Below are positions 20,863 to 63,882 of a stretch of DNA of 64,000 nucleotides, in pieces (position 1 is the stretch's first letter; each line of letters starts with the position of its first letter). The notes below the pieces were generated by a model. It had not been told where the DNA came from. It did no database searches and was given only the letters and a program-made list of their open reading frames with translations. Position numbers and translations under genes: made by a program. This DNA is from Mytilus trossulus (Eukaryota), in NCBI RefSeq assembly GCF_036588685.1, contig NC_086373.1, positions 41,292,001-41,356,000 of the forward strand, in the 5' to 3' direction.

Positions 20863-22130
20863 TTATGTGTAACCATTGACGCGAACACATTTATTGCATC
20901 CATTTACGTTTTGACAATCCTCATTGAAGTTGCATTGTTTCCTTAAAAAACAAGTGTCGACACAGCTTTTTGGGAAAATTCGATGAACTGAACCACCAGA
21001 TACAATACGGTCAAATGAATCACCTTGGATGATACGACCTGCTGAATCGCCTCGATTAACACGGCCTACCGAACCGCCTGGAATAAGATTATGTACTGAG
21101 CCGCCTGGAATGATACTATCTCCTTTGCCGGCTAGGGTAATACGATCTAATGAACCGCTATGAATAATACGATCTAATGAACCTCTTCGAATAATACTAT
21201 CTCGATTACCGCCTAGGGCAATACGATCTACTGAACCGCCTGGCAGAATGTGGTCCAATTGGGAGTTATCAACCATTCTTTGGCAAAATCTTCTGCAATC
21301 TTGTCTTCCTGTCAATCTACAACTTCTTAAGCATCCCGATGAGACTGTATTACCAGGAAGTATTGAGTCTATTGGTACACGATCAAGTGTTCCAATGACT
21401 TCAACAGCTCTACAAAAACTATTACATCCTACGGTTTTGCAGAAGTATCCTAGTCCACAACTTCTGTCACTTAAGCATTGTTTATCACATTTCGGCTTCA
21501 TTGAGTATTCTGTAATATAAAAAATAGAAATTGTTATTTTATTGAAAATTTCATTAAATGTAAAATGTCGAAATTTAAGAGGAATGTTTTTCTTTCTTTC
21601 ACTCGGTTTTCGTGTTTTTTTTATTTCTTGAATGTTCACCGTTATTATGAACTGGATGTTTGACTAGTTATATAAACATTATGAAAGAAATGTTGACCAT
21701 TCCTTTTAGTGAAATTTTACGTTTAAATATCATACCCAGAATCATGCAGTATATTTGAGTTATTCACTACTTCTAATTTGAAGTTGTCTCATTGACATTC
21801 TGTGAGATATCACTTTTTCATGTAGACATATTGCTTAAAGAAAAGTTTATTTGCAGTACTTTTTTCGACCTTATTCGAAAGTTTTCCACGATTCCGTTAT
21901 TTTTCTTTGATTTTTTTCTGGCTTCACCTCTGATATCATACTTGATAAACACTGTACACATGAGAACACTTTGTTCGTATTAAGTTATAAATGAGATAAT
22001 TTTTGGCTTTTTGAACTGTGGACTACAAAGCGAATCATAATTACTAATATTCTATATTTTATATAAAATACAAACCTGCAAAAACACAGGAAACAAATCC
22101 TAGAAAAATCAAAACAGCTTTTCCCTCCAT
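20863..22130 (-). CDS. Cluster gene 1: secreted Cys-capped Gly/Ser/Arg/Ile-repeat protein, 233 aa. Coding exons 22130-22076 and 21509-20863
   Basis: Signal exon MEGKAVLIFLGFVSCVFA-G|gtttgt. Acceptor ttacag|AATACTCA gives EYSMKPKC... The frame is intact to VRVNGYT*. AATAAA lies at ~20757-20762 (minus). Four paralogues are in the window. Confidence 0.9.
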
Positions 22131-22321
22131 TTTAGCTGAAAAAAATAAATAAATGAAATATCAGTATAAAAAAAAACTATAAGCTGTTGATTTAAATTTT
22201 AATCAAAGAAACAACTATGTTTGAAACTTTGAAAGTATTTGCGAAAAAACTTGAAAATCTAAAACAAAAATGTGCAAATGGTATTAGGTCTTTTTAAACG
22301 CCGAAAATAAAGGAAAAGTAA

Positions 22322-22470
22322 GTATATATTTGTTTAGGGGCCAGCTGAAGGACGCCTCCGGGTGCAGGAATTCGCTACATTGAAGACCTGTTGGTGACCT
22401 TCTGCTGTTGTTTTTTATTTGGTCGGGTTGTTGTCTCTTTGACACATTCCCCATTTCCATTCTCAATTTT
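22322..22470 (+). mobile_element. Short copy of the Naiad 3' terminus in intron 1 of gene 1. Other copies at ~14800-14980, 18460-18595, 40405-40526(-)
   Basis: Near-identical to 32290-32440 (ggggccagctgaaggacgcctccgggtgc...cattccccatttccattctcaatttt). Confidence 0.85.
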
Positions 22471-24286
22471 ATTTTAAATCAGCATTAATCGATATGTTAC
22501 TATTTAATATTTATATTTATTCAATCAAACGCTCTTTTCATGTTGAATTGAGTCCAATATATGAATTAATATATTTGTTATAAAATACTTATAAGAATAC
22601 AAACTTTTGAAAGGATCAATTCAAATATAAGGAGTCATTTCAAGAAAAAAAATCATATTTTGAAATATTTTTTTCTGATCAATTCTTAATTAGTAAACAC
22701 AAATGAAAACTTGAGTATCTGATCAATAAATACTGAAAAGATTTTTTTTTCTCCAAACATTAAGATTACTTACGTCAATAGTAGACTTTCAAAAGATGTT
22801 TTTCTCCGCTTAGATTGAATCATTTATAAGTATAGAGAAAAAACTGTTCCATTCGGAGCCATTGAACTATACGAGAGGGAGTGAAGTGACACGTTTTCTT
22901 GGTTTGTACCCGCGGAATGGACCCTACTAAAGATAGAAGTCAAAATCATAGCATATTTCAACACGTTCTTTTCCTAATTACTCAAAAAACTATTGAAATA
23001 GCAAACTGTTATCGTTTAAAATTCATCCACCATTAGAGTTTTTATCATTCCAATAAGGAAAATGGATCGAAGTATTTTTTTAGAGTAATAAGGAGTCTTT
23101 GACCATTTGTTATAAAAAAAAATGAGTTCTATTTTTAATTTGAGATGTTATTTGCATCGGGAAAGGATTCTGTAGTTGTTAGAAAAATCTCAACAAAGCT
23201 AGCGGGCTTTTAAAAAATTGGTACACGGAAAGAAATAGGGCTTAACTAGTTCTTAAAAAAAAATAATTGTGCCCAATAGATTCTTTATAGAAATATCTTT
23301 CGATCATTTGTTTACTAAGAAGGGCACATTTCTAGCACAGATCTACACTTAAGATACCGCTTAGTTGCGATTTTTTTTATAAACCAAACTGTTACATTTG
23401 TATTTTGATAGATTTTTTAAATGCATCTATTCAATTTCAAGATGAAAAAAAAAAAAGTTAAAAAAAAAATATAGAAAAAAAAACTAAACAAATATAATAA
23501 AAGAATAACAACCAACAAAACGACAAGAAGACAAACAGCATTAAACACCATTTTACACCGAGGAAAAGTTGGAATACGACCTTTGAAATTTGGTTTTGTA
23601 GAAAAAAGAGTTTTTTGCCTCCATGCTTTCAGATAAAATAAAAAGCTTCAATGCCTTTAAATTAAAAAAAGAAAGAAAATAAATAGGCTGGTGACAAAAA
23701 GTTTCACATTGGGATGCTTAAATTATAGATATTGTTGATCGATCTGAGGATTCTTATATATCATATGGACCTTTCAGATACTATATGCATGTCATATTTT
23801 ATGAATATTGATACGATAATACTTTTGAAATTATACGATACTGATTTTACGTACACAAACTTGAGTTTTTTTATGCATTTACAGGGCGCGATCGTTAGAT
23901 TCCTGAATGTTTCTTTATAGATTTTTTTTTATTTGTTTGAAACTTTTGTCAGTCTTGTTTACGAGAAAGTTAGGTCAATCTTTAAATAGATTTCAAATAT
24001 ACAGGACATATTGATTTCAAGATTTATTAAATTGTGATTTGTTCTAGACCTAACGGTGATGTTAAAAGAGGCCGAATATACCATGTTATCAAGACCAATT
24101 TATTGTAACTATTAAGTAACCAATCAACAACAATTAATTGATAAGGAATTCAGAACTGTTTCGATTTGATATTTACAACTAGGTCGTTTTTAATATTACT
24201 TTTGTTATACCTGATACAACTTGAACAATTTTACTAAGCAGTGAAAAATGTAGAAATTTGGTGATAATTCATAAACTATTGTTAAC

Positions 24287-25586: not shown

Positions 25587-27150
25587 TTACTTGCAACCTT
25601 AAACGCCTTTTTTAAATGGATAATATTTCATCTTTAAGATGCGAGAAATTGCATTTTGATACGTGTGTAGTAGTACTAATGCATACATACGGAATACTTT
25701 GAAGGAACATATCATGTTTTTTAACCTAATAAACAAATAAATAACAGTAAGAGGTTTAACATTGTTTTGCTCTTTTAAAACCACAATGACTAGCCATTCG
25801 ATTTTATTTAGATTATACTAAATCTTGGACTGCAATTATCAATTATTGATATCATGTTAAATGTTTTATGTTTATCAAAAAATTGTCAAGCTATTGTATT
25901 GTCTGCAGTTTCTAAATAAATATCTCTTTCTTTATTAAGTCAGTCAAAATTGATAATTATAAGATGGGTAGTTGTTACTCATTCCTTTTAGCTTTTGATT
26001 TTGCCATTTGATTAGGGACTTTCCGTTTTGAATTTTCCTCTGAGTTCAGTATATTTGTGATTTTACTTTTCATTTGGAAGGTTATGTAGTGTAGGAACTT
26101 CCAAATGTAAGACAGCATTTCTAAATTTATGTTATGTTATCTGTTAAAATTATCATATATTGAGTACGTAGTAATGTGGTATTTTTTTAATGATTACCTG
26201 ATAGCTACAAATGTATACCCTTTTCTTATTTCCAGTCTGTACATTTAGGGGTGTTTTACAGTAGAATGTGTACCTTTTTAATATCGTTTTTGCATATGAT
26301 CAAGCTGCAAAACTTCATAGGTAATTTTTACGTATATAAATAATGATGAAAATAGAAAGATTGACAAAATTGATTTACCGTATCATCAAACAAGTCTAGT
26401 CAAACTGACATTGCTATATTTGAAATTGAAACCATTAACTTCTTAGTAGGACATAAACTGAAGGAGTTGTGTAACGCGGACCTTATAGTTTTAGTCGTTT
26501 TATTTTCTAAATTCGCCGTGACTCCTGATAGTGCTATTCGGACTCAAGTCAATAGTATGCGATTGTTTTGCGACACATTTTCAGAGCTTTCCAAAAAAAA
26601 AAAATATTGTCTGATTATTTTTTACTCTACTAGAAAAAACACAACGGTATCCCTACTATGTTTATAAGTAGATCTTTTTAAGGCTTTTATGAAATAGTTT
26701 GAATTATACATATTTTGTTTGTATGCTGTTTTTGTCTTTGTATTTCTAACTCATCGCATATTTTCCCTTATTTGAGTTACAGCTTTTGATAGAATGTTTT
26801 TCCCTTAAGAATTTCTCATCACAGTGGAATGGTTTATGCTTTATTGCTTAAACAACTATGGAATGAACTAACTGATTGAACATATTAATACCAACACCGC
26901 ATGGAAACAGAGACGACCGTTTTTGTTTATTGTGCAACCAACAACAGTTTAATGGAAAACAATGATATATTAACATTAGAAAATACTGTCTGAACAAAAG
27001 CAATAATTTTCTGACCATACATTCTTAGATTAGTTTTGTGGTTAGATTATGCCGGATCATAATGTGTTTATGTTGAATGTGTTTTTAATGTAAGTTTGAC
27101 CTTTCATTTACAATTTGATTGATGTCGCATTAACAAGTATTTCAAAACGT

Positions 27151-27201
27151 ACGTCACACTGGCAATGAACCGTTTATTTCCTCTTGTACATTGTATATAA
27201 G
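27151..27201 (+). promoter_or_regulatory. Family core promoter of gene 2 (ACGTCACAC...GAACC..TTATTTCCT...TATATAAG). Non-coding exon 1 ends at 27270
   Basis: The same motif order occurs upstream of genes 3, 4 and 5, each followed ~65-70 nt after the TATA by a GTAA donor. Confidence 0.75.
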
Positions 27202-27716
27202 GTATCAACTGATAACAGATATCATAGAAAATCACTTTACACAACTTAGTAACGAATACATTTAAGAAAGGTAAGTCGTCTAATAATATTAATTGCTAAA
27301 ATTATAAATATCAAAGATAATGTCATTTTTTGGATATAATAAAAGGAACGACAACGTTTATGTTATCACATATTCTATTGAAGAATTGCTACTACTAGTA
27401 TCAGGAATATTGTTTTAGGTATAATATTGGTTTAAATTCCAGTAAATGCTGTGACCAAGAAAGAGCAGAAGATTGTTAAAGTAACATGATGAATTACATT
27501 CGTTAACTATTGTGCTTCTTTAAATAGATAACGACAAAATTTATATATTTTTTTTAATCAAGACTGTTATGTAAAACAATTTTTTTTATATCTATCAAAT
27601 AGAAATTGGAAAAAAGACAGTGCCATTTCTGTGTTTATATTGCTCTATCTCTATTTAAGCAACATGTTTCAAAAAATAATTTACTCACACGTTTTTTATT
27701 TGTTTTTTCAGGAATA

Positions 27717-29162
27717 ATGGAGGGAAAAGCTGTTGTGATATTTTTAGGATGTATTTCATGTGTTTTTGCAGGTATGTATCCCTCTTCGTTTCATATGCAA
27801 ACTATATTTGATCATTTTGATAATAATATATATTCAAAAGAATGTAATTAAGCAGTTATAATTCCGAAGAAAAAATTTAAAAAAAAATCGACAAACTCAT
27901 ACGTATTTTTTAAAGTACGAACAAACCATAAACAATATTCCTTCATTAATTCCAAGAGGTATTCTTTAGAAAAAATTGCCAATCGCCGTATAACAACTTC
28001 TCACTCTTTGTAAAGTGGTCAAGACCATCCAAAGACTAAATTTGCTTTCCTTTTTCGTGTTTTTATGAGATATTCCATACGTTCACACAATACTTCTTCA
28101 CAATAACGCACACAAAGTTATATGATTCTTTATTCTCTCCACAATGTTCTAAACATAATTCGGGTACACCCCATAATGAAATCACATTTTGTTCATGAAA
28201 TTCTTTGTATTTTTGATAAAATCAGTATGACACCATTGGTAATTTGAATTAGACAAACCTTATAATTGCAATAACCACAAATAGTGATATAAGTGTTTTA
28301 TGATCATCTGTCATTTTTGGTTAAAAAAACTTTTTTTAAAATATTTATGCATATAAAGCGTATTTAAACCTTTAACAGGAACGTTGAGACCAGAATTCAT
28401 CTGCACTCTATGAAATTATTACAAACAATAAAAAATAGCAACATATAATATCTAAATCAAATAATTTTCATTTACATAGAAAAAAATAGAGATAAAAATG
28501 AAAAGCAGTCTTATCTCATTATAAACATTATTTTATATCATCATTTTTAATTTTTAAAATTTATTATTACAGCAGGTTATCCAGTCACAAAAAAGTGTGC
28601 TAATGAATGTTCGAGTCGTTTAGATTGTGGAAGAGGATACTATTGCCAAACTATAGGATGCAATAGAAGGTGCACATCTCTAAACTTACCAATTGGCAAT
28701 GCTCATATTGACCAAGTAGTTTCACAAGACACATTCGCATTGGAATGCGAACTAAGATGTAGACAACAAGGAAGGGTAGGTTGTAGACGACTTTGTCAAC
28801 AAAATGGAGATCAGTTTCTAGTAGACCAAAGATTCCCAGTTGATTCCTTGGACCATTCCTTTCAAGGGTCCTCAGTAGACCGTGCCTTTCCAGGGGATTC
28901 ATTAGGAAGTATTCGTTCAGGCAGTCTTGTTGATCGTATCAGGTCAATCGGTCCAGTAGACCGTACCTTTCCAGGGGCTTCATTAGGCAGTATTCGTACA
29001 GGCAGTCTTGTTGATCGTATCAGGTCAATCGGTCCAGTTGAGTCAATTCATCATAAAGGCTGCGAAAACATGTGTATTTCTAGGAATCAATGCAAACTCA
29101 ACGAGGATTGTGTCAGCAGAGATGGATGTAACGTATGTGTTCGCGTCAGTTCATATGCGTAG
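27717..29162 (+). CDS. Cluster gene 2: secreted Cys-capped repeat protein, 213-214 aa. Coding exons 27717-27771 and 28573(or 28576)-29162
   Basis: MEGKAVVIFLGCISCVFA-G|gtatgt. Acceptor tacagcag, then GYPVTKKCANECSSRLDCGRGYYCQTIGCNRRC..., in frame with ORF 28740-29162, ending VRVSSYA*. Confidence 0.9.
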
Positions 29163-29631: not shown

Positions 29632-31803
29632 TTGGAGGATTGCAACACAATTTCATATAGCAGTCCTAAGTATGAAATTGTTCAAATTATTATGGCATAT
29701 TGTTATTCTAAATTATTTCCCAAAATTGATCGCCCTGAAGATCATAAAAAACATTTTATTAAAATTAAGTATGTCAATAAAGGCTTTGATTTTGTAAATA
29801 TTGCCGGTATATTTAACGACCATTCTGTTAAAGAACAAATTCCTGGATATTTTGACAATACTGAGCTACCTCTTATTTGTTATATTTACAAGAAATTTAC
29901 CCGGAAATTTGTGTTTAATTATAGTCAATTGTGTAAAGATGTTAATATCAGTGAAAATACACCTACGTCATGTAATTGCAGTAGTTCCGAATATATTTAT
30001 GGACCCATTTCCCATCTTATAACAGGAGATATTAATATCGTTCAAGACCGAGAGTTAAAATTATTTCCCAGTAAAGGACCTAAATATCGTCCCCCGTCAA
30101 TTATTAATTGGAATGAGTGTCGTAATATCATCCACGACTCACTCCATACTTACTGTATGAAATGGATAAAACGGGAAAAAGCTGACAAAAAATCTTTGGA
30201 CTCTTTTTTTAATTCAGTAATGAAGATAGTTGATATACGTATTCAACATTTTAAAGAATATTTTACTATTATCAATAACCACAATAAACCTATTACTCGT
30301 ATCAAACATAAACTAAAAGAACTAGCCAAGGAATTTGTTTTTGTCCCGGCCGATAAAGCTGCTAATAATATTATTATTGTTTGACGTAAATTTTACATTG
30401 AGGTTCTGAAAAAAGAAATCACCAATTCACCAACATTCCAACTGACTCCATTTTCAGAAAACGAATCTGTAACAAACATAAACTTTTAGCCACAATGAAA
30501 GTCCCAACTATGTATTGGCTTCCGAAGCTACACAAAACCCCTTACAAATATAGATTTATTTCGTCTTCAAGCCATTGTTCAACTACTAAATTGTCTATTC
30601 TTCTTACCAGCACACTTGGTACAATTAAAAACCTTATAATAAATTGTTCAAATAAGGCCTTCGAAAATGGTGGAATAAATTACTTTTGGAGTGTCAAGAA
30701 CTCGTTGGAAGTACTTGATAAATTGCATGCTTATATTGGTGATTTTGAATCTGTTCAAAGTTTTGATTTTTCTACCCTGTATACCACATTTCTTCACATT
30801 CTCATTAAGAAAAAGTTCACACACCTAATTAAATGGGCATTCCAAAAATCAGAATGTGAATATATATGTTCAAACTCTTTAAGGTCATTTTTTAGTAGCA
30901 ATACACAAAAAAAACTATGTTAATTGGACATGCTTTGATACTATATATGCCCTTGAATTTTTACTAGATAACATTTTTGTTCGCTTTGGGGATTCCGAAT
31001 ATCGTCAGATTATCGGAATTCCAATGGGGACTAACTGTGCACCACTTATTGCGGACCTCTTTTTGTATTGTTATGAGTTACAATTTATGACAAAAATAAG
31101 CAAATACCCATCAAAACAACATCTGATAAACAAATTTAATAATACTTTTAGATATTTGGATGATATTTTGGCTCTCAATAATGACGACTTCAGTATGTAT
31201 ATTAATGAAATTTATCCTGCTGAACTTACTTTAAATAAAGCTAATACTGACAATGACCACTGCCCTTTCCTCGATCTTGATATCTATATCACTAACGGAA
31301 AGCTGAATACTAAAATTTATGATAAAAGGGATGATTTTTCATTTCCTATCGTTGATTATCCGTTTTTAGATGGTGACGTTTCCCTGTCACCATCTTATGG
31401 TGTTTATATATCTCAACTTGTACGATTCGCTCGTGTATGTAACAATGTTTTAGATTTTAATGAGAGAAATTTATGTATTACTGAAAAATTATTACACCAG
31501 GGTTTTCGATATCACAAACTAGTCAAAACGTTTACTAAATTTTATCATCGGTATAAAGACATCATTAGTAAATATAGCTCAACATGCAGACTTCTTATAC
31601 GTTCAGGTATTTCACATCCAATTTTTTATGACAATATTCTTTATAAAGCACAAAGGTGTCAGTATTCACCTCAGAAACTTACAAAACCTTTGAATAGACT
31701 TATTAAGAAGGGATATAATTACGATACTGTTGTCAAGTCATTAAAGATTGCATATTTTGGCGTTAATATTGAGTCACTGATAAGGTCTTTGCGTCGGAAC
31801 TAA
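29632..31803 (+). pseudogene. Penelope-like reverse transcriptase, frameshifted (~30465-30494, ~30910). TGA at 30382-30384 is a likely Sec codon
   Basis: Three colinear ORFs: 29632-30384, 30495-30923 and 31024-31803. The frame continues past the TGA as RKFYIEVLKKEI. Confidence 0.85.
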
Positions 31804-36904: not shown

Positions 36905-38050
36905 TTATGTGTAGCTATTAACTCGAACACATTTATTACATCCATTTACGTTTTGACAATCCTCATTGAAGTTGCATTGTTTCCTTAAAAAACAAGTGTC
37001 GACACAGACTTTTGGGAAAATTCCATCAACTGAACCGCCAGGCACAATACGGCCTAATGAACTGCCTTGAATAATACGACGTGCTGAATCTCCTCGAATA
37101 ACACGGTCTACCGAACTGCCTGAAATAATACGATCTAATGAACCTCTTCGGATAATACTTTCTCCTTTACCGCCTAGGGTAATACGATCTACTGAACCGC
37201 CTGGAATAAGATTATGTACCGAACCGCCTGGAATAATACGGTGTACTGAACTGCCTGGGATGATATGATCTAATGAACTTCCTCGAATAATACTATCTCT
37301 TCTACCGCCTAGGGTAATACGATCTACTGAACCTCCTGGCAGAATGTGATCTAATCGGGAATTTTCAACCATTCTTTGACAAAATCTTCTGCAATCTTGT
37401 CTTCCTGTCAATCGACAACTTCTTAAGCATCCCGATGAGACTGAATTGCCAGAATTATATTCTATAATATGGAAGATTGGAAATAGTTAAAATGTTAAAA
37501 TGAAGTGTAAAATGCCGAGTTTTTGGGAGAAAGAGGTCTTTGTAGTGTTTGTAATATTTTTTATCAATATTATGACTTGAATTTGTCTGAATATTTGCAC
37601 ATAAATATGAAAGAATGGTGGCACATTACTTTTAATAAACTATTACGTTTAACATCTAAGACTGAATTATGCAGTTTATGTGAGTTATTTTCTTTAATTT
37701 GCTGTCTTAATAAGAAATATTGTCTTCATTATTAACATCTATCGCCAAAAAAGTGTTTTTATTAAGTTTTTGCTGTACTTTCTTCGGCCTGTTTTGAAAG
37801 TTTTTTTCACCCGTTTCAGGTATTTTTTTTTAAATTTCTGGCTTCACCTCAGATATCATACTTGATAAAAACTGTAAAAATGAGAATTTTTTTTCCGCAT
37901 TAAGTAACAAATGAGAATATTTTCGGCTTAATGAACTTTGGACTACAAGGAGAGTCATCATTACTATAATTTTTTATTTTATATAAAATACAAACCTGCA
38001 AAAATACAGGAAACAAATCCAAGAAAAATCAAAACAGCTTTTCTCTCCAT
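36905..38050 (-). CDS. Cluster gene 3: secreted repeat protein lacking the N-terminal 6-Cys module, 203 aa. Coding exons 38050-37996 and 37461-36905
   Basis: MERKAVLIFLGFVSCIFA-G|gtttgt. Acceptor attatag|AATATAAT gives EYNSGNSVSSGCLRSCRLTGRQDCRRFC..., intact to VRVNSYT*. Closest paralogue of gene 1. Confidence 0.88.
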
Positions 38051-38511
38051 TTTAGCTAAAATAGATAAATAAGTATAAATAAAAAAAAAACGATAAACTG
38101 ATTAATAAATTCTAAATCAAAGAAATATTAAGGTCTTTTTGTAATGAAAATATAGGTAAAGTAAAATTCATTTCAAATAAGCATGAAACGATATTTTACT
38201 ATTTACTATTTATGTTCATTCAATTAAAAATCAAACGCTCTTTTCATGTTGCAATAAGTCCAATATTTGAATGAATGTATATTTGTTATAAAATACTTAT
38301 AAGGATACAAACGTTTCAAAGGATCAATTCAAATGAGAGGAGTCATTTCAAGTAAAGCATATTTTTGAAAAAAATTCGCTGATTATTTTTTAATTAAAAC
38401 ATGAGAATGTGCTTAATTAATACTGAAAACATTAAGTAAACTTACTTGATATTATATTTCTTTAATAATTTGCTTTGTTAGCGATGTACTGTCTTTATAG
38501 TCCACTACTGA

Positions 38512-38562
38512 CTTATATATAGTTTACACAAGGAAATGAACGGTCCAATGGTTGTGTGACGT
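38512..38562 (-). promoter_or_regulatory. Family core promoter of gene 3. Non-coding exon 1 ends at 38446
   Basis: Minus strand ACGTCACACaaccattGGACCgtTCATTTCCTtgtgtaaacTATATATAAG. Donor gtaagt at 38445. Confidence 0.72.
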
Positions 38563-40044: not shown

Positions 40045-40232
40045 NNNNNNNNNNNNNNNNNNNNNNNNNNNNNNNNNNNNNNNNNNNNNNNNNNNNNNNN
40101 NNNNNNNNNNNNNNNNNNNNNNNNNNNNNNNNNNNNNNNNNNNNNNNNNNNNNNNNNNNNNNNNNNNNNNNNNNNNNNNNNNNNNNNNNNNNNNNNNNNN
40201 NNNNNNNNNNNNNNNNNNNNNNNNNNNNNNNN
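40045..40232. other. Assembly gap (188 N)
   Basis: Run of N. Confidence 1.
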
Positions 40233-45200: not shown

Positions 45201-47718
45201 GTGGTCATCAAACAATCATTTAGACTAGACGATTCTGGTGTTGCTTTACAACTGCAGTCGAATACGACCCTGATTGGTGTTGTAGTTGAATCTTTTCTCA
45301 CAGCATGATGCGGAATATAGTGTACTTTGCTCTTTTCGTCGGCCTCATTAGTAGTATGCACTTTCTATGAAGCCCCTTTTCTCCTGCTCAGCCATTATTT
45401 CTCCATATTTTTCCAATAGTTTGGGTTCTTTGCTAAGTCTTCTTACTACACTTTCCGTCCTTCGTTGTGCAATGGCTTTATTTGTCGGTAACGTAGGGTG
45501 ATCCTCTTTCCATGGTAACGTTACAAAATATCTGTTGTCATGGTAACGAATTTGTTTCTCTTCATAAGTCTTTTGAATATCCATCTGTTCTTCTAACTTT
45601 GTGGTGTCAATTTTCTCGGTGACTCTATTTTCCAAAATTTCTCCAAGTCGTACTCATCGGTTTTTGTTGCGATCATCACGTTCATCATCGAAGCTCTCTT
45701 GTATCCATCTGTGTCAGAGTTGTGTGAATGTAGCGTTCCAGACAACAGGTATCCGATCTTTGATTGAACAGCTGTCGGTCCTTCGCCTCGGATAATATCA
45801 TTCTGAACAATTGACCAGAAGTAATCAGCTCCAATTAGAATAGAAATTTCAAAGTTTTCATCTGCTGTTACTGGGTGAGCTAATTTGATTCCTGACAAAT
45901 ATGTAAGTTTTGCTGCTTGACGTACATAGGTTCTCATCGGTGCTGCGATCTCTGGAACGATCAAGACTCGAATCGGCAGTTTACCATCTGTAGTTATGAG
46001 ATATACAAATCCTGTTCCTAAATGGCAAATTTTAGTACTATTTGCATTGTCTCCAAATCCGGATAGGTTAACGCTTTAAGTTCCAGTAGGTTTGAGTTTC
46101 AATTTCTCGGCTAATTCCTCTGTGATAAATGAGCGCTGTGCGCCTTCGTCAAACAATATTTTTGCATCAAGTATTTCATGTTCTACACTTACTGGGTTAA
46201 TTGCTGTCTTCAAAAGTTCACGATCTGTCGATTGCGAGTGTAAAATAGTGTCTGATTCCTCCGCGTTGTGTTGAATTGTGCCTACGGTTATATCCCCTGT
46301 TGGTTTGTTGTCTTCATTTCTTTTAACATTGTCTTTGCAAATGCTGGTGTGATGACGTTTGTGACACTTGTTGCAAGTTTTTGTAGATTTACATGCGGAT
46401 AAGCTATGGTGTCCTAGACAGTTAAAGCATAAACGATCTTTTTTCACGATTGACATCCGGCCATTGTAATCAGATACTTTAGTGCAATTAACAGACGAGT
46501 GTGGCTCCTTACAGTACGCACAGAGTGGTTTGGGTTTAGTGTTACTTGAGTTTGTATTCTTGTTACCTCTATTTCGATTACTATAATTTGTATTTGTCAG
46601 AAAGGCGGCGGTAGCTGTAGGGGGTTGTAACTGTTCTGAAGTTTTGCCTGCATCCATAATATAAAGTTCATCGAAAATTCCACGACGTAATTCATTCAGT
46701 TGTAAATCTGTAGATCTATATTGTCTGGCAAGATTTCTGCGGATTTCACCGGGTAGTTTGTTCATAATGATGGGCACTAAAAACGCTCCGTATGTGTCTT
46801 CACTTTGACCTAATGACTCCAAACCTCTAATGTGTATCCCAATTTCATCGTAGTAGTCTTTCATGCTAGATATCGTGTATTTAGGGGCTGGTATATCAAC
46901 TAGTGCTTGCATATCCTTCTGTCTTATTACATGCGATTGTCCATATCTGTCTTGCAGTAAAGAAATAGCTTTCTCATAATTTGCATGTGTAAGAGCAAAC
47001 CCTGTGACGGTTTTCAATGCTTCATCATGGAGTAGTGACTTCAAATAATTAAATTTCTGAACATTTCCAAGAGTAGTGTTTTCGTGAACGGATATCTCGT
47101 ATGAATCCCAAATGACTGCCACTGCATAATATTACCATCAAAGGTAGGAAGATTCAATTTGGGCAACTTGTTGTACTCATTTAATCTAGTGTTACTACGT
47201 GAAAACTGAGTTTCCGGTACACGGAAGTTTGAATTACATGTATTCTGTTTATTGTATATCTCGGGTTGAGCATAACTTTGTTGATCATGAGCAGGTTGAG
47301 CATAACTTGGTTGACCATGAGCGGGTTGAGCATCAGTGGGCTGAGCAGAGGCGGGTTGAGCAGAGGCGGAATGTGAAGGGTCGCTATAACTGACGAAATC
47401 TTTTGCATTTGTACTGAGTGTGGATGTATTGACAAGAATGAGCTTTTGTATTTGCGTTATTTTCCCATCTAATGTGTAAGCATACTCATCTGAATCGACG
47501 ATCTCGGCTTCTACTTCTCCTTCATCAAGATTTTCTAGAATGTCCTCATTAAGTTTTTGTAGTGTCTCTTGTTTCTTCAACAGATTGTTCACAATTTTAG
47601 TTAACTCTTCAGTGTTCACGGGCTCATCTTCGTCGTTTCGGATGTCCTCAAATTTCTTCAAAAGTCGGGAAATAACGCTTCTGTGTCCTGCACGTATAGA
47701 ACGTAGTTTGGAACTCAT
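42257..47718 (-). pseudogene. BEL/Pao gag-pol polyprotein with 3 frameshifts and 3 in-frame stops
   Basis: ORFs 47041-47727, 46076-47122, 45593-45964, 45348-45635, 43676-45361 and 42257-43609 are consecutive parts of one polyprotein. Confidence 0.93.
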
Positions 47719-47735
47719 CCTGGTCACGGCACCAA

Positions 47736-47907: not shown

Positions 47908-48679
47908 ATGGCATTTTAACGTAAAGTATAATAAAATATAATATGTACTCAGCCACTTTTGTTTTTGTTTTTTTCTAATACCCATAACGTTGCTATGTAT
48001 GTGACGTCATAGAAAATACTTTTAAAATAAAATTAATCTGTAAAAGACAATAATATCATGACATTCAGTATAATAAATTAAATAACACATAGCTGAGAGG
48101 TTGATAGGGCAGATTGGTACCCCTCGAAAAAGCATTGTCACCCTTGGCTTCGCCGCGGTTTACAATGTTTTCTCGGGGTACCAATCTGCTCTATCACCCT
48201 CTCATCTATGTGTTATTTATATAATAATATATTGAAAGTACAAAGAAAAATAGGATGAAAGATGATATTTCATTAAAAACCTTCAAACAATTTTAAATTA
48301 TGGTTTGAGCCATGAAGTTGCTCTTTGAGAATTACACTGACATTTCTAAATTATGTTACTGAATTTACAGTTCCGTGATCACATCAGAACGAATGTTCGC
48401 TTAACTTTTATTTCATATCTGAAAAGGCGTAGATTTATCTAAAATTTCACGATTAAGATTTCATTTATCTCTTTTGCTTAACTTTTACTATTATCTAACT
48501 AATTGTTGATTTTGCAAAAGATTTAAGTGGAAGGTGTAATCCGCCAGTCTCCAAGGTTTGAGATAACCAATTAGTATTTGCTCGATGATTTATCAAATTT
48601 TAAATGGTATTGTTTCCTGATTTTAATTACACAAAATTGGGAAAAAGACAATTCAATTTTTATTTCGCCTGATTTATGA

Positions 48680-48850
48680 TCATAGATACCAGGACTAAAT
48701 TTTATATATAGACCAGACGCGCGTTTCATCTACAAAAGACTCATCAGACCTCGAATTCAAGAATGTAAAAAACCCAAATAAAGTACGAAGTTGAAAAGCA
48801 TTAAGAATAAAAATTCCTAAAAGGTTTGCCAAATCCAGCTAAGGTAATCT
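48680..48850 (-). mobile_element. Hammerhead-ribozyme-containing repeat (core intact, stem I degraded)
   Basis: Minus strand CTGATGA-gtct tttgt agat-GAAA-cgcgcg-TC-tgg at ~48712-48747. Confidence 0.72.
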
Positions 48851-49144
48851 AGCCGGTCTAAGATTTATGAAATGTATAACATAAGACTTAAATATAAAAT
48901 TATACTAGTATACAAATGTCGCTTAAAATATGTCTGTATAAAAAGGGCATGTGAAATTTCAAACAGCACTCAAATTATTGTTGTTTAAACTAAGATTTCT
49001 GATCAGGAAATAATCTCTTTATTTATTTTGTTTATTGTTAGACTTTAAATGAGACTTGTGTTAACATTTTATATCGGTTTACTCGATGTAAGTATGACAC
49101 TTATAACTTGATTGATGTTCATAATTACAAGTATTGCAAAACTT

Positions 49145-49214
49145 ACGTCACACCTTCACTGAACCATTTATTTCCTCTAGTACAGTATATTTTCCCTTGT
49201 AGAGTGTATATAAG
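49145..49214 (+). promoter_or_regulatory. Family core promoter of gene 4. Non-coding exon 1 ends at 49280
   Basis: ACGTCACACcttcactGAACCatTTATTTCCTCTaGTACA...TATATAAG. Donor aag|gtaatt at 49281. Confidence 0.75.
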
Positions 49215-49619
49215 ACAGAAATAAATTGAAGACTTCACACAACATTTCTGTACACCTTTAAATAACTACACGAACTCAAGGTAATTAATATGTAAATATA
49301 TACAAAAGATGTTTAGTTTAAAAATAATATAGTATATCTCGTAAATGAAATGGATTCTTATAATCAGATATATAATTTTAAAATTCAATTATGATATGAG
49401 CTTGTGTTATTGTTGAAAACGGCAAATACTTGAAACTCAGGAAAAATAAAAATAAGTTGGATGACACAAAAGATGCTACAAGAATTGTTTGTTATCTCCA
49501 TCAATTGCATGTCGATCATGCTGATAAACAAGTTACTTTCATTAATGACTTTCAATTTTCTGATGGTGACTTCTCTTGGTATATGGTATGCAGCTTTATT
49601 TTGTCATTTTTTTTTTAAA

Positions 49620-50030
49620 TAATAAGGTTTTTCTACCTAAGTTATAGATTTACTTACTGTAAATTCAGAAATTATTGCGAGGTTTTTATTATTGCGAATA
49701 ATGCGACTGAGTTGTAAACGCAATAATTAAAACTCGCATTCTGTAATATTTCAACTGAATTAAGCATGACTTTTCTCAAAATCGTAAAAATTAAAATCGC
49801 ATTCAAGTGTAAAATGACAAAATCGCAATAATAAATGCACGCAATAATTTCTGAATTTACAGTAACTGTATTTGGCAAAACTTTAAGGAATTTTTGTCCT
49901 CAAAAATCTTCAACTTCGTACTTTATTTGGCCTTTTAACTTTTTGGATTCGAGCGTCACTGATGAGTCTTTTGTACGAAAGTATGGCGAAGATACAAACT
50001 TTAATTCTGGAATCGATGATGAGTTTATTC
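49620..50030 (+). mobile_element. Hammerhead-repeat copy in intron 1 of gene 4, interrupted by a MITE
   Basis: gagcgtcaCTGATGAgtcttttgtacGAAAgtatggcg at 49951-49988. The flanks match 7555-7710 and 48680-48850. Confidence 0.7.
49655..49864. mobile_element. MITE with TA target duplication
   Basis: TA-ctgtaaattcagaaattattgcg ... cgcaataatttctgaatttacag-TA, perfect 23-bp TIRs. Confidence 0.88.
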
Positions 50031-50129
50031 ATAAATAATACATATCAGTAGAAACATCATTCAATATAAGTAAAAAATTCAAACCATACGAATTAAGTGA
50101 CATTTATTTATATATTTATTCCAGAAACA

Positions 50130-51467
50130 ATGGAAGGAAAGGCTGTTATTATTTTCTTTGGATTTATATCATGCGCTGTAGCTGGTATGTATCTTATTTT
50201 ATTACATATTCAATCATTAGTTTATTGTTTTGATGAGAGAAATTTGACAAAGAAATAAATTTTAAGCAAGCATTATTCTACAAAAATACACACAAAATAT
50301 TTGAATATCGATATACCACGATTATTTAAACAATAGACCAAATACATGTATACCTAAATCAACATTCCAACAACGCTACTTCGTTTCACCTTTTTGACGA
50401 CTCATTCTACGTATACCTTCACTCATAAGAAATATATTAGAAAACATAGGAATTTAAAATCATTTAAAGAATAAAAATTGTGGTAATCAAAACTATACGG
50501 ATTTTTTTTTTATTTGGAAAAAGTACATAGAATTTAGAGTCCAACACATTATTTATTGTTTCATTGTTAACAATATTAAATTAGCAGTCGTTTTTCATTA
50601 ATCTAATTCGCCTTTTCCACGAGTTCAAAACATATTTCACCCTCACAAGGAACGCTGAAACCACAAAATCACATTTACTCAATGCAATAATTAAAGCAGA
50701 AATTAAATTTGTAACAAACAGTGTGGATATCGAAAGTATTGAAACCAAATAATATTTATGATCTAAGTTACCAATGATATTTCATATTTAAACATTTCTA
50801 AATGAAATTTATTATTACAGTATATTCAGTCAAAAAACCAGTTTGTGAAATTGAATGCTCGAGTCATTCAGAATGTCTAGATGGATACAGTTGTCAAACA
50901 GAAGGATGTGATCGTATTTGCAGACCTAGGAGAGTGATTTTATCAAATTCAGCAATTAGATCCGACATTATTTCATCCGGATGCGTTCAGAGATGTATGG
51001 ACCGAGGAGAACTAGGTTGCAGAAGTCTTTGTCAGCGAAGTTTAGATTCATTGTCAGGAGGCCAAATCATTCCTGGTGGTTTCTTAGACAGTGGATTCCA
51101 AGATGCTTTAGTAGATCCTATTCGGTTAGATAGTCTTGTTAGACATACCTTGCCAGTAGGTGATTCTATTCGGCCAGGTAGTCTTGTTAGACGTATCTCG
51201 CCAGTAGGAGGTTCTATTCGTTCAGATAGTCTTGTTAGACATAACTCGCCAGTAGGTGATTCTATTCTGTTAGATAGTCGTCTTGGACGTATGTCACAAG
51301 TAGGTTCTATACGGTCAGGAAGTCTTCTGGGGCGTATCTCGCAAGTTGATTCAATTTTACATAAAGACTGTCAAAATACATGCATTTCACGAGGCTGCAA
51401 CTTTAACGAGGAATGTGTAACAAGAGATGGATGTTCTGTATGTGTTCGTGCCAAGACCTACGCATAA
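50130..51467 (+). CDS. Cluster gene 4: secreted Cys-capped repeat protein, 233 aa. Coding exons 50130-50184 and 50821-51467
   Basis: MEGKAVIIFFGFISCAVA-G|gtatgt. Acceptor ttacag| at 50820 gives VYSVKKPVCEIECSSHSEC..., ending VRAKTYA*. AATAAA at ~51560. Confidence 0.92.
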
Positions 51468-53786: not shown

Positions 53787-54707
53787 TAATTAAGGTCTTT
53801 CCTTTTACTAAAGGGAAAGACCTTACTGTATTTCTTCTGATTATTATTATTAGGTCTTTCCACTTTTCTGTGGAAAGACCTATTGTTTTTCTTCTGATTT
53901 TTTTTTTTTTCTTCCGCCTAATTTTGTTCTTGCGATAAACATTTGTTTCGCAATATGTCGCTTAGATATTTTGTATATGATATCGAACAGTTTATGCGCT
54001 TTTGAAATTTACCCTGCGTAAACGAATACTTTTCTTTGTAGGAGTTATCTCCCCAAACACTGTTTTCCTTGTTATGGCATCTCCTTCGCAACCGTTAAAG
54101 ATTATGACAAATTTATTTTACAAAATTGTTCGTTACATCCTCAGTAATTTTTGGCGTATTTGGATCGAAGCGATTCGAAGAAATTTTATAGGAGTTATCT
54201 ATCTTTTCGGAATAAATTTGTCGGTATGTTTTTTTAACTCATAAACCGTTAACCGTATAACCCTGGAATGTTTTTATTTAAGTCCCCTGATTCCTAACTT
54301 AGAAAATTAGGTCAAGGTCAAAGGTCAAGGTCATATTTTAGATTTTCATATGTCTTTGATTTCCCTATAACTCTTGAACGGTTATAGATACAAAAAAAAT
54401 AAGCAGTGAAAAATGCTTGGTACTTCAAGGGACAACTTTTTTTACATTATGACTATATTGATTTTACCATCATGTAAGGGACATAACTCCCATCGATGGT
54501 TTTTAAAAGGCCATTTTTAGGCAAAACTCTTAAACAAAAGGTCCTTGACCCATAGGGTCTTTTGCAATGACTTTGTGGAGCAATGACCTTGACGAAGGTT
54601 ACAAGGTCAAAGGTCAAGGTCATCAAATTATGTGGTTTTGGCACTATTTAAACAGTTTTATGTGTGTTTGAATTTCAACTAACCAACCAACCAACCAACC
54701 AACCAAC

Positions 54708-54754
<47 letters not shown>

Positions 54755-55030
54755 GATCATGATCAATCAACCAATAATGATCATGTTCAATCAATCAATC
54801 ATGTTTCCGTCTCATGTGTTTCTTATAGGGTTCAACCAACCAACCAACCAACCAACCAACCAACCAATCAATCAATCAATCATGCATGATCATGATCATG
54901 ATCAACCAATCATGTTTCCGTCTCATGTGTGTAATATAGGGTCCAAGATCTTCTTTGTGTCTTTTTCCGTGTTTCAATTGACCCTATCCAATGTGTTTAA
55001 CCAACCAACCAACCAACCAACCAACCAACT

Positions 55031-55080
<50 letters not shown>

Positions 55081-55218
55081 GATCATGATCAATCAATCAT
55101 GTTTCCGTCTCATGTGTTTAATATAGGGTCCAAGATCTTCTTTCTTTTTCCGTGTTTCAATTGACCCTATCCAACGTGTTTAACCAACCAACCAACCAAC
55201 CAACCAACTAATCAACTT

Positions 55219-55253
<35 letters not shown>

Positions 55254-61250: not shown

Positions 61251-61796
61251 GATAAATAAATTGTATTTATAAGTAACTTAAACTTATTAAATGCCATCAA
61301 CTATAGATGCTGTCAGATTTTATGAATTCTGAGGATTGTGTCATAAAAAAAGTAAAACTTGGTGAAAAAGACAGCAATAGTCTCCAATTTCGTTGAACAA
61401 AATCAAATTCGGAACAGAGTGATTTTACGCACATCAATGGTGTCTATTTTTTAAGACCACACAATTTAAATGAATATTTTCCTGTGACAAACATCCTGAT
61501 ATATTCGCTATGGTTTCACATCTTGACCTTTGCAATATAGTTTTTGAAACTAAAAATACGTCTTTTAGATGAATATTTAACAAAATAAAAAATGCGGACA
61601 GCTTAAATCAAACGTTACTCATTTTTTTAAAAAATTTAAACAACATTTTCTGCCCAAACTGATGTGTTTTAAAATATTGTTTGATTGTGGTTAGGCGATA
61701 CGGGAGACTGGGGTCAAAGTTTTTAACATATAAACCCAATGCAAGTTTGACATTTAGAACTTGATTGATGACAATATTTACAGCATTTCAAAACTT

Positions 61797-61866
61797 ACGT
61801 CACACCTGCACTGAACCATTTATTTCCTCTAGTACAGTATATTTCCTCATATAAAGTGTATATAAG
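61797..61866 (+). promoter_or_regulatory. Family core promoter of gene 5. Non-coding exon 1 ends at 61937
   Basis: Near-identical to 49145-49214. Donor aag|gtaagt at 61938. Confidence 0.75.
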
Positions 61867-62347
61867 ACAGAAATGAATTGAAGACTTCACAAAAACATTT
61901 CTGTACACCGTTAAATAACGATACACATACATTCAAGGTAAGTTATATATGTTTATAAGGAGTTTATTTTTCAAAAAATAATAGAGTATGTTTTTATATG
62001 CAATATATGCAATTAATATTTAATTGAAAGAACAACAACGTCTATCTTGTTAAAACAATAGATTCGCAGTATAGATATATGAATACTGATGCAATTATGA
62101 TTTGAGCAAGAAATATTTCTAGGAACGTCAAATCATCGAAAATCACGGATTCAAAAGATAAATGGTTTTTTTCTTAATTCTATGATGTATGGCAAACATA
62201 CATTTTCCATGATGAGTCATGTTGATAAGTTTTGCAGTCCTCGTTTAAGGCATTAAATATACTGGTAAAATTAATTTTTCGTTTTCAGTAATATTTTCAA
62301 ACCAATCGAATTGAGTTGCATTTGTTCTAATATTCATTCCAGGTATA

Positions 62348-63882
62348 ATGGAAGGGAAAGCTGTTATCATTTTCTTTGGATTTATAGCATGTGCTTTTGC
62401 TGGTATGTATCTTATAACGTTATATATTTTTGTTATTGTTTAAATGCTGATTTATACAAGGAATTAAGTAGTTATGAGCAAACATTATCAAAACATTACA
62501 GTCCAAATATTTGAAAACAAACAATCCAAAAATTCTTAAAACAAATGATTAGATACATGAATGTTGAAATTAACATGCAAGCAATGATACATCGTTTCAA
62601 CACCTGGTTTATACGTTTACCATGTTTCTGAAGGAAAACAATCAGGGAAAAAAACAAATTTGAAATCATTTAAGAATAAAAATTGAAGCATGCAAAACAC
62701 AAATGACGGATACATAACACAAGAATACCTGATATTTTGTATTTAAAGCACAAACATGCTTAACGATCGGTGTAAGTAAATTAGAACAACGGTTTTTGAC
62801 CTTGAAAAATAGTTAATAGAACAAAGATTCCGACAAAAACAAACTTTTTTGATCTATTATTTAGAAAATACAAAAATAAACATTCATTTATTACGAATTT
62901 ATTTTACATATTTCTATGAGTAAAAGGCATTTTTCACTCTCGCTACTTACGATGAAACCATGAAAGTACTCTATGCAATGTTTATATCAGTAATACAATC
63001 TATAATAAACACTTTGTTTGTAAAAATCATCGAAACCTAATTATATTTATAATCTGATCGACGTCACTGTTGGGTCTTATGTAGATGAAATGTTCGTCCG
63101 ACTAATGAAATAAATAGCCTGGTATCTCTTATTTTTTCGATTGATAATTCATATTTCAACATTTATGATTAAAATTTATTATTACAGTATATTCACCCAA
63201 AGGCGGGAAAGCTTGTGAAATTGAATGCTCGAGTCATTCAGAATGTCCAGAAGGTCACAGTTGTCAAACTGAAGGATGTGATCGTATGTGCAGACCTAGA
63301 AGAGTAATTTTATCAAATTCAGCAGTTAGATCAGACATATTTTCATCTGGATGTCTTCAGAGATGTATGGACCGAGGTAACCTAGGTTGCAGAAGTCTGT
63401 GTCAGCGTAGTGAAGATTCATTATCGGGAGGCCAAATCAATCCTGGCAGATCCTTAGACAGTAGATTCCAAGATGCTTTAGTAGATTCTATTCGGTCAGA
63501 TAGTCTTGTTAGACATACCTCGTCAGTAGGTGATTCTATTCGGTCAGGTAGTCTTGTTAAACATATGTCGCCAGTAGGTGGTTCTATTCTGTCAGATAGT
63601 CGTCTTGGACGTATCTCACAAGTAGGTGATTCTATTCGGTCAGGTAGTGTTGGAAGACATATCTCGCCAGTAGGTTCTATAGGGTCAGGTAGTCTTCTTG
63701 GACGTATATCTCCAGTAGGTTCTATTCGGTCAGATGGTTTAGTTGGACGTATCTCGCATGTTGATTCAATTTTAAATAAAGGCTGTCAAAATACATGCAT
63801 TTCACGAGGCTGCAACTTTAACGAGGAATGTGTAACACGAGGTGGATGTTCTGTATGTGTTCGTGCCAAGACGTACGCATAA
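62348..63882 (+). CDS. Cluster gene 5: secreted Cys-capped repeat protein, 249 aa. Coding exons 62348-62402 and 63188-63882
   Basis: MEGKAVIIFFGFIACAFA-G|gtatgt. Acceptor ttacag| gives VYSPKGGKACEIECSSHSECPEGHSCQTEGCDRMC..., in frame with ORF 63286-63882, ending VRAKTYA*. AATAAA at ~63975. Confidence 0.92.

What the first reader, a model, noticed from the sequence alone, without database searches (positions are those of the whole stretch)
20863..63882. Five-gene cluster of an unrecognised secreted block protein family: disulfide caps around a variable Gly/Ser/Arg/Ile repeat
Seen in sequence: five intact paralogues with the same gene plan (non-coding exon, 55-nt signal-peptide coding segment, phase-1 intron, one large exon). 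The protein plan is an 18-aa signal, module A (C-x3-C-x5-C-x5-C-x4-C-x3-C, absent in gene 3), module B (C-x3-C-x7-C-x3-C-Q), a Cys-free repeat block, module C (C-x3-C-x4/5-C-x5-C-x5-C-x2-C) and VRxxxY[AT]*. Cys spacing is almost invariant, while repeat unit and copy number differ per gene. Inference: folded ends around a repetitive core is the design of self-assembling extracellular material proteins, so this may be a co-regulated set for byssus, periostracum, shell matrix or mucus. I cannot assign it to a named family from memory.
Basis: partly seen in the sequence, partly recalled or inferred. Interest (0 to 1): 0.9.

Follow-up and report, generated by a model that had tools for sequence, protein, structure and literature searches.

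The report
Mussel secreted proteins with reduced-WAP caps
The five genes are real, intact and transcribed mussel (Mytilus) genes for small secreted proteins, but their cysteine "caps" are cut-down WAP domains, so this is an uncharacterised mussel-only branch of a known protein kind, and its job (defence coat or building material) is still untested.

Summary
The window is Mytilus trossulus. All five genes have the stated plan: short non-coding exon, 60-nt exon with 55 coding nt for an 18-aa signal peptide, phase-1 intron, one large exon. Cys spacing is near-invariant. Repeat unit and copy number differ per gene. RefSeq proteins equal four of the five models exactly, and spliced contigs cover gene 4. 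The N gap lies about 1.5 kb upstream of gene 3's conserved promoter-like block and touches no exon.

Three corrections:
- The cluster has eight genes; three lie just past the window end.
- It is one edge of a ~550-kb supercluster of at least 20 open reading frames built the same way.
- The caps are not an unknown fold. Module A is a WAP four-disulfide-core domain lacking C1 and C6. Module C is a derived copy. UniProt already auto-names orthologues "WAP domain-containing protein".

Homologues were found only in five Mytilus species, and no paper was found that describes them. The repeat block is predicted disordered, basic and weakly constrained. The C-terminal cap is strongly constrained.

Function is inferred only. 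I favour a crustin/waprin-like secreted defensive coat protein (~0.4) over a structural material protein (~0.3). The scan's first readers noted the sister families elsewhere on this chromosome.

The parts
20863..21509 (-). Gene 1 large exon (modules A, B, nine-residue repeats, module C, stop); RefSeq LOC134707869
22076..22135 (-). Gene 1 signal-peptide exon (5 nt UTR + 55 nt coding, AG...GT)
22774..22830 (-). Gene 1 putative first non-coding exon and TATA-like motif (inferred only; donor GTAAGT after 22774)
27087..27270 (+). Gene 2 conserved promoter block (TGATTGATG, TTACGTCAC, GTATATAAG) and first non-coding exon ending at 27270
27712..27771 (+). Gene 2 signal-peptide exon
28573..29162 (+). 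Gene 2 large exon (NAGNAG acceptor; RefSeq LOC134707878 uses the second AG, 3 nt further on)
36905..37461 (-). Gene 3 large exon, module A missing by in-frame deletion
37996..38055 (-). Gene 3 signal-peptide exon
38446..38562 (-). Gene 3 conserved promoter block and putative first exon (inferred)
40045..40232 (.). Assembly gap, intergenic, upstream of gene 3; not part of any exon of the family
49086..49280 (+). Gene 4 conserved upstream block and first non-coding exon (transcript contig covers at least 49194-49280)
50125..50184 (+). Gene 4 signal-peptide exon
50821..51467 (+). Gene 4 large exon; RefSeq LOC134707892; contigs of RNA-like runs start at the acceptor
61738..61937 (+). Gene 5 conserved upstream block and first non-coding exon ending at 61937 (inferred)
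62343..62402 (+). Gene 5 signal-peptide exon
63188..63882 (+). Gene 5 large exon; RefSeq LOC134707894

Best explanation
Shown: these are five of eight tandem, intact genes of a Mytilus-restricted family of small (178-262 aa mature), basic (pI 8.4-9.8) secreted proteins. Module A is a WAP four-disulfide-core domain reduced to three disulfides: WAP Cys1 and Cys6 are gone, and Cys2-x3-Cys3-x5-Cys4-x5-Cys5-x4-Cys7-x3-Cys8 is kept. Module C is a derived copy of the same domain with the fifth Cys moved by one residue. Module B is predicted to be a two-disulfide helical hairpin. The repeat block is a fast-changing array of 8-9-residue Gly/Ser-turn plus hydrophobic/charged units (GGS-V-D-R-I-I-P type), predicted disordered. 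The family is one branch of a ~550-kb supercluster. The supercluster genes whose N-termini were read share the gene plan, and the others share the large-exon start and C-terminal module. Two members join a canonical 8-Cys WAP to 4 or 11 reduced modules. Inferred: the proteins work like type II crustins or waprins. The cell secretes them, the stable cationic WAP-type caps bind a surface (microbial envelope or the animal's own secreted matrix), and the hydrophobic Gly-rich repeats self-associate or embed. The result would be a protective, probably antibacterial, coat in mucus or in secreted materials. Elafin-style protease inhibition is unlikely because the Cys1-Cys2 loop is absent and the Cys2-Cys3 loop has only 3 residues. 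My odds: WAP-derived identity 0.85; crustin/waprin-like defensive role 0.4.
For: Gene reality: intact ORFs, exact RefSeq models for 7 of 8 genes, and contigs of four RNA-like runs that start at the gene-4 acceptor and skip both introns. dN/dS is below 1 everywhere (C cap 0.05-0.14, N caps 0.18-0.6, repeats 0.4-0.9). WAP origin: phmmer links module A to multi-module proteins P0006 and P0008, which hit Pfam WAP at 1e-15 over profile positions 9/10-41. Their M. trossulus counterpart L020 has a full WAP plus 11 A-type modules (96 bits). A genome scan with PF00095 gives about 20-bit hits over positions 10-39 for the neighbour genes. hhalign of module A against nine canonical M. trossulus WAPs gives probability 91% and E 1e-6, and 0 of 150 Cys-fixed column shuffles reach that score. 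Module A against neighbour modules gives 97.7%, and A against C gives 85.5%. In the AlphaFold2 models the best Foldseek hits are omwaprin, SLPI, nawaprin and anosmin WAP domains, for module A (39% identity, rmsd 0.8 A over 28 columns, VIA Z 3.6) and separately for module C (rmsd 1.2-1.6 A). UniProt names orthologues 'WAP domain-containing protein', and the nearest protein-atlas cluster is 100% WAP (a lead only). Crustin likeness: type II crustins are about 175 aa, pI about 8.5, with a signal peptide, a hydrophobic Gly-rich repeat, a 4-Cys region and a C-terminal WAP (PMC7381244). Here the composition and pI are similar.
Against: No Pfam model reaches E 10 on the five proteins themselves. A family-only profile of module A hits carboxypeptidase-inhibitor knottins (E 0.02-0.8) rather than WAP chains in the PDB. 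All fold matches have weak statistics (Foldseek E 0.2-0.9, Z below 4) because the domains have only about 30 residues. Module C also aligns with knottin peptides (Z 2.3-3.0), and its profile match to canonical WAP is weak. Disulfide connectivity could not be read. There is no functional evidence at all: tissue, induction by infection and presence in any proteome are all unknown. WAP-like genes are enriched in mussel foot and mantle rim (PMC5549309), which suits a material role as well.
Confidence: 0.55

Rival explanations
1. Structural material protein. The repeats form an elastomeric or beta-rich self-assembling core and the WAP-type caps act as stable terminal knots or cross-link points. The protein would be deposited in byssus, periostracum, shell matrix or mucus, much as lustrin A combines Cys-rich modules, a Gly/Ser-rich domain and a WAP-like end.
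For: PGG/GGS turn plus short hydrophobic strand repeats, with copy-number change between paralogues. The repeat block is predicted non-globular. There is a large tandem family with conserved upstream blocks. WAP-like transcripts are enriched in mussel foot and mantle rim (PMC5549309). WAP proteins occur in mollusc shells (PMC3896809, PMC5854119). Lustrin A is an extracrystalline matrix protein with Cys repeats (PMC6003135).
Against: Tyr (2-4 per protein) and Lys are very low, unlike DOPA-type byssal proteins. The proteins are small. No match to any named byssal or shell protein was found. No proteome or tissue evidence exists. Repeats evolve almost neutrally in some pairs (dN/dS up to 0.87).
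Confidence: 0.3
2. Anchored serine-protease inhibitor of the elafin/trappin or perlwapin type. The caps would inhibit proteases and the repeats would tether them to a matrix.
For: The caps have a WAP-type fold, with SLPI among the best fold matches. Proteinase inhibitors are abundant in mussel foot and are proposed to protect the byssus (PMC7971044, PMC5549309).
Against: WAP Cys1 and the Cys1-Cys2 segment are missing, and the Cys2-Cys3 loop has 3 residues. In elafin and SLPI this region carries the inhibitory loop (established knowledge, not tested here). The repeats lack the Gln/Lys transglutaminase motif of trappins.
Confidence: 0.1
3. Precursor of short bioactive peptides cut out of the repeat block at basic sites.
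For: Arg-Arg pairs occur in some repeat units of genes 1, 3, 4, 7 and 8.
Against: The dibasic sites are not conserved between paralogues (none in gene 5) and have no regular spacing. The most constrained part is the C-terminal cap, not the repeats.
Confidence: 0.03

Closest known systems
WAP 'four-disulfide core' domain (Pfam PF00095), especially waprins such as omwaprin
   Same: The Cys2 to Cys8 spacing is the same as in canonical M. trossulus WAPs and, as I recall the sequence, in omwaprin (C-x3-C-x5-C-x5-C...C-x3-C). Conserved acidic and Gly positions are shared. The predicted helix-turn plus beta-hairpin core has omwaprin as the best fold match for both caps. The proteins are cationic and secreted.
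   Different: There are only six Cys: WAP Cys1 and Cys6 (one disulfide) and the whole N-terminal loop are missing. In module C the fifth Cys is shifted by one residue. The Pfam model does not reach threshold on these five proteins.
Type II crustins of decapod crustaceans
   Same: Signal peptide, hydrophobic Gly-rich short tandem repeats, a separate 4-Cys region and a C-terminal WAP-type domain. Size is about 175-260 aa and pI 8.4-9.8.
   Different: Different phylum and no detectable sequence kinship outside the WAP core. The order of parts differs: an extra WAP-type cap and the 4-Cys hairpin come before the repeats. The WAP has six, not eight, Cys. Antibacterial activity is untested.
Lustrin A and perlwapin (mollusc shell matrix WAP proteins)
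   Same: Molluscan secreted proteins that combine Cys-rich modules, a Gly/Ser-rich low-complexity region and WAP-type domains.
   Different: Lustrin A is very large, with Pro-rich spacers. Perlwapin has three canonical WAPs and no repeats. No sequence match to either was returned, and shell localisation is unknown here.
Neighbouring Mytilus families in the same supercluster (236-243-aa Gly/Ser/Arg-rich proteins; 544- and 650-aa multi-module proteins)
   Same: Same gene plan (18-19-aa signal exon, phase-1 intron, one large exon starting x-Tyr). Same A-type six-Cys module at the C-terminus followed by a short basic tail with a Tyr near the end. All are uncharacterised and Mytilus-only.
   Different: The neighbours lack modules A and B at the N-terminus, and their low-complexity region is not a regular 8-9-residue Ile-rich repeat. 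Module C of this family has the shifted fifth Cys and the tail V-R-x-x-x-Y-[AT].

Membership tests
WAP four-disulfide core (PF00095) | Eight conserved Cys forming four disulfides | tested here: not met
   Modules A and C have six Cys each. The positions of WAP Cys1 and Cys6 are absent or non-Cys.
WAP four-disulfide core (PF00095) | Core spacing Cys2-Cys8 and conserved non-Cys residues | tested here: met
   Module A against nine canonical M. trossulus WAPs: hhalign probability 91%, E 1e-6, and 0 of 150 Cys-fixed shuffles reach the score. Module C is linked only through module A (85.5%) and the neighbour modules (80.6%; 8 of 150 shuffles reach that score).
WAP four-disulfide core (PF00095) | Pfam model above gathering score | tested here: not met
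   No WAP hit at E <= 10 on the five proteins. The model is met by supercluster relatives (P0006 58 bits, P0008 59 bits, L020 96 bits, L013 30 bits). The neighbours' C-terminal modules are borderline at about 20 bits.
WAP four-disulfide core (PF00095) | WAP fold | tested here: inconclusive
   The best Foldseek hits for both caps are omwaprin, SLPI, nawaprin and anosmin, but with E 0.2-0.9 and VIA Z 2.5-3.6. Knottin peptides score similarly for module C.
WAP four-disulfide core (PF00095) | Disulfide pairing C2-C7, C3-C5, C4-C8 | not testable with these tools
   Model coordinates are not returned; this needs disulfide mapping or a solved structure.
Type II crustin | Twelve conserved Cys (4-Cys region directly followed by an 8-Cys WAP) at the C-terminus, after an N-terminal Gly-rich region | tested here: not met
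   The order here is WAP-like A, 4-Cys B, repeats, six-Cys C. Crustin definition from PMC7381244.
Type II crustin | Antibacterial activity | not testable with these tools
   Needs recombinant protein assays.
Inhibitor cystine knot / carboxypeptidase-inhibitor knottins | Six Cys with 1-4, 2-5, 3-6 knot and matching sequence profile | tested here: inconclusive
   The module A profile hits potato-type carboxypeptidase-inhibitor knottins over the first four Cys only (E 0.02-0.8). Module C aligns with knottin peptides at Z 2.3-3.0. The last two Cys do not fit, and WAP matches rank first.
Trappin (elafin with cementoin repeats) | Gln/Lys-rich transglutaminase-substrate hexapeptide repeats plus a canonical inhibitory WAP | tested here: not met
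   The repeats are Gly/Ser/Arg/Ile/Asp-rich with few Gln or Lys, and the WAP lacks the Cys1-Cys2 loop.
RTX beta-roll nonapeptide repeats | GGxGxDxUx consensus | tested here: not met
   The unit is G-G-S-[VL]-D-R-I-I-[PL]: there is no Gly at position 4 and Asp is at position 5. There is no Pfam hit, and AlphaFold2 gives no beta-roll.

The most novel reading that the evidence does not exclude
The eight genes, together with the rest of the ~550-kb supercluster, are a Mytilus-specific toolkit of self-assembling extracellular proteins. In it a WAP domain stripped to three disulfides has been re-used as a terminal 'cap' for elastomeric or beta-forming repeats. That would make it a new class of mussel material protein (byssus, periostracum or shell) that evolved from an immune or inhibitor domain.
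Probability: 0.25. Interest if true: 0.7.

Novelty: new variant of a known kind. Interest (0 to 1): 0.45.

Why it matters
Mussels are models for wet adhesion, biomineralisation and invertebrate immunity, and much of their secreted repertoire is lineage-specific and unnamed. This work ties a seemingly orphan family to the WAP fold. It shows that the family belongs to a very large, genus-restricted gene expansion with a common gene plan. It also defines a three-disulfide 'reduced WAP' module that standard domain models miss. That gives annotators a way to name dozens of Mytilus genes. It gives experimenters a compact set of small proteins to test for antibacterial, matrix-binding or self-assembly activity. 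If they prove to be material proteins, they would show a defence domain re-used as a structural cap. If they are crustin-like, they would be an independent, molluscan invention of the 'Gly-rich repeat plus WAP' antimicrobial design.

Tried and rejected
Searches that found nothing useful:
- Pfam on the five proteins gave only sub-threshold noise: DX module at E 0.2 and carboxypeptidase A inhibitor at E 0.05.
- PDB sequence search with gene 1, with the module C profile and with P0006 found nothing useful.
- The protein atlas with the exon-only sequence gave no usable hit.
- Accession numbers of orthologues appear in no paper of the library.
- Searches for Mytilus with WAP, byssus, shell or crustin-like terms gave only general context.

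Their likeness to the M. trossulus ORF in L020 suggests a mussel source.
- The sequencing-run search returned only coded, low-share runs of unknown tissue. Expression level and tissue therefore could not be read, and the joint table was swamped by a high-copy repeat at 49655-49975.
- The joined spliced models were not typed or searched. Exons were searched by reference, and full-length proteins came from database hits.

Readings rejected:
- RTX-like calcium-binding repeats: the motif does not fit.
- Neuropeptide-type precursor: the dibasic sites are not conserved.
- Mucin: few Thr or Pro.
- DOPA adhesive: few Tyr or Lys.
- Pseudogenes: ORFs are intact and dN/dS is below 1.
- P0007 is a bacterial repeat protein, a chance hit.


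Full report
**Source and gene models.** The window is Mytilus trossulus: the gene-1 protein is 100% identical to RefSeq LOC134707869, and the window is C1:41,292,001-41,356,000 of the assembly. Self-comparison of the five loci and a motif search found one 60-nt exon upstream of each large exon. It is bounded by AG and GT and holds 5 nt of leader plus 55 coding nt for an 18-aa signal peptide. The intron that follows is in phase 1. Joining the split codon gives mature N-termini x-Tyr-... in every gene. RefSeq proteins of 233, 213, 233 and 249 aa contain my exon translations for genes 1, 2, 4 and 5 without a mismatch, and the same holds for three further genes. None was retrieved for gene 3. I searched exon by exon, by reference. 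I did not type or search joined models; full-length sequences came from database hits.

**Transcripts.** Only coded runs with a low share of words were offered. When four of them were laid on gene 4, contigs lay on the large exon from 50820, which is the acceptor. Two of these contigs carried 147 and 54 more letters upstream. There was low depth on the signal exon and on about 49194-49280, and none in either intron apart from a repeat piece. This is what spliced RNA looks like. It also shows a first non-coding exon of at least 87 nt, so the conserved GTATATAAG at 49206 lies inside the transcript and the true start site is unsure. Genes 2, 4 and 5 share an upstream block with TGATTGATG, TTACGTCAC and that TATA-like motif, followed by a GTAAGT-type donor, and gene 3 carries diverged versions of the same block. 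First exons other than that of gene 4 are inferred.

**The N gap.** The gap (40045-40232) lies about 1.5 kb upstream of gene 3's conserved promoter-like block. Sequence on both sides is collinear with the region upstream of gene 1. No exon is affected. Continuity across the gap cannot be proven, and I did not try to fill it.

**Protein plan.** Gene 3 lost module A and its linker by an in-frame deletion of about 48 codons that kept the acceptor and the first two codons. An M. galloprovincialis orthologue (P0002) instead lacks module B. Only module C is always present, and it is also the most constrained part: dN/dS is 0.05-0.14, against 0.18-0.6 for the N-terminal caps and 0.4-0.9 for the repeats. 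The repeats are 27-nt units in genes 1 and 3, an 81-nt unit in gene 2 and 48-nt units in genes 4 and 5, with different copy numbers. The repeat block holds 77-159 residues of Gly, Ser, Arg, Ile/Leu/Val and Asp, with pI 10.2-11.6 in seven of the eight proteins (7.0 in gene 2). Whole mature proteins have pI 8.4-9.8 and only 2-4 Tyr.

**Extent of the family.**
- A six-frame search of the genome finds three more intact copies just beyond the window end, so there are eight genes in about 75 kb.
- A scan of the genome with Pfam WAP then showed that C1:41.41-41.85 Mb is full of ORFs that match WAP profile positions 10-39 only.
- Reading these ORFs shows at least 14 genes of 236-243 aa. Each has a Cys-free Gly/Ser/Arg region and one C-terminal module with exactly the module A spacing, followed by a basic tail ending ...GYSS.
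- Two long ORFs (544 and 650 aa) start with a canonical eight-Cys WAP and continue with 4 or 11 A-type modules.
- RefSeq models of the neighbours have an 18-19-aa signal peptide followed by [AV]-Tyr, which is the same gene plan.
- All homologues of either family come from five Mytilus species: trossulus, galloprovincialis, edulis, coruscus and californianus. They are unnamed or auto-named 'WAP domain-containing protein'.

**What the caps are.** Pfam finds nothing on the five proteins, but several independent lines converge on WAP.
- phmmer links module A to P0006 and P0008, which hit Pfam WAP at 1e-15 over positions 9/10-41. L020, their M. trossulus counterpart, scores 96 bits.
- Canonical M. 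trossulus WAPs have C2-x3-C3-x5-C4-x5-C5C6-x3-C7-x3-C8. Module A is the same string with C6 replaced by Lys, Gln or Arg and everything before C2 missing.
- hhalign of module A against these WAPs gives probability 91%, and none of 150 controls that keep the Cys columns and shuffle the rest reaches the score. Module A against the neighbour modules gives 97.7%, and A against C gives 85.5%.
- AlphaFold2 models the caps at pLDDT 70-87. The top Foldseek matches for module A, and separately for module C, are omwaprin, SLPI, nawaprin and the anosmin WAP.

The statistics of each fold match are weak because the domains have about 30 residues. A family-only profile of module A prefers carboxypeptidase-inhibitor knottins over the first four Cys. 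Module C also aligns with knottins. I therefore put the WAP origin at about 0.85 for module A and somewhat lower for module C. Module B is modelled as a helix-loop-helix (pLDDT about 58), and the repeat block has pLDDT 25-35.

**Function.** Nothing here measures function.
- The design (signal peptide, hydrophobic Gly-rich short repeats, a 4-Cys region, a C-terminal WAP-type domain, about 180-260 aa, basic) is closest to type II crustins (PMC7381244). The best fold match is a waprin.
- The missing Cys1-Cys2 segment and the three-residue Cys2-Cys3 loop argue against elafin-type protease inhibition. This rests on established knowledge of elafin and SLPI, not on a test here.
- Mussel foot and mantle rim are enriched in WAP-like transcripts (PMC5549309). 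WAP proteins and lustrin A occur in mollusc shells. The material reading therefore stays open.
- My odds are: crustin/waprin-like protective coat 0.4; structural material 0.3; protease inhibitor 0.1; peptide precursor 0.03; other, for the rest.

**Verdict.** The family is a new, uncharacterised variant of a known kind, not a categorically new system. First readers of this scan had already noted the sister families and the reduced-WAP idea elsewhere on this chromosome. I tested that idea here.

Noticed in passing
window 42257-47727 (-): Near-complete Pao/BEL-type LTR retroelement between genes 3 and 4, with gag-like DUF1759, Pao peptidase A17, RT, RNase H, integrase and DUF5641. A second, fragmentary copy lies at about 3534-6509 (-).
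   Followed up: partly
window 29632-31803 (+): Three consecutive ORFs (250, 142 and 259 aa) of a retroelement-like insert just downstream of gene 2, with no Pfam hit at E 0.01. Another first-reader note calls it a possible selenoprotein retroelement.
   Followed up: no
window 48611-48850 and 49655-49975: High-copy dispersed repeats. Contig depth in RNA-like runs reaches thousands, with many partial joints and loose ends. The second repeat sits in intron 1 of gene 4 and swamped the joint table.
   Followed up: no
window 27116-27201, 49109-49214, 61762-61866; diverged versions in gene 3 at 38510-38562 (-): Conserved upstream block shared by genes 2, 4 and 5, with diverged versions in gene 3 (TGATTGATG, CRE-like TTACGTCAC, TTTATTTCCTCT, GTATATAAG). 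It is a candidate shared regulatory module. Gene 1 lacks it and has a different TATA-like motif near 22825, and a copy of that motif also lies upstream of gene 3 at 38799-38808.
   Followed up: partly
P0002 (M. galloprovincialis) versus window gene 1: The orthologue lacks module B, whereas gene 3 in this window lacks module A. The caps are therefore lost one at a time, and only module C is always kept.
   Followed up: partly
window 28573-28578: NAGNAG tandem acceptor in gene 2. RefSeq uses the second AG (213 aa); the first AG would add one Ala.
   Followed up: partly
G000:C1:41413495-41415345 (L020) and 41846876-41848507 (L013): Long single-exon ORFs (650 and 544 aa) that join one canonical eight-Cys WAP to 11 or 4 six-Cys modules. 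They are natural intermediates between full and reduced WAP. P0006 and P0008, from 'metagenome' sources, are close relatives of the first ORF.
   Followed up: partly
window 54675-55253: Long compound microsatellite (CAAC/CAAT and 8-mers) with strong negative GC skew, between genes 4 and 5.
   Followed up: no
G000:C13:12197956-12198663 and C2:102219184-102219816: Weak matches (25-35% identity) to the repeat block only. The C13 copy has stops, and the C2 copy sits in a 430-aa ORF.
   Followed up: no
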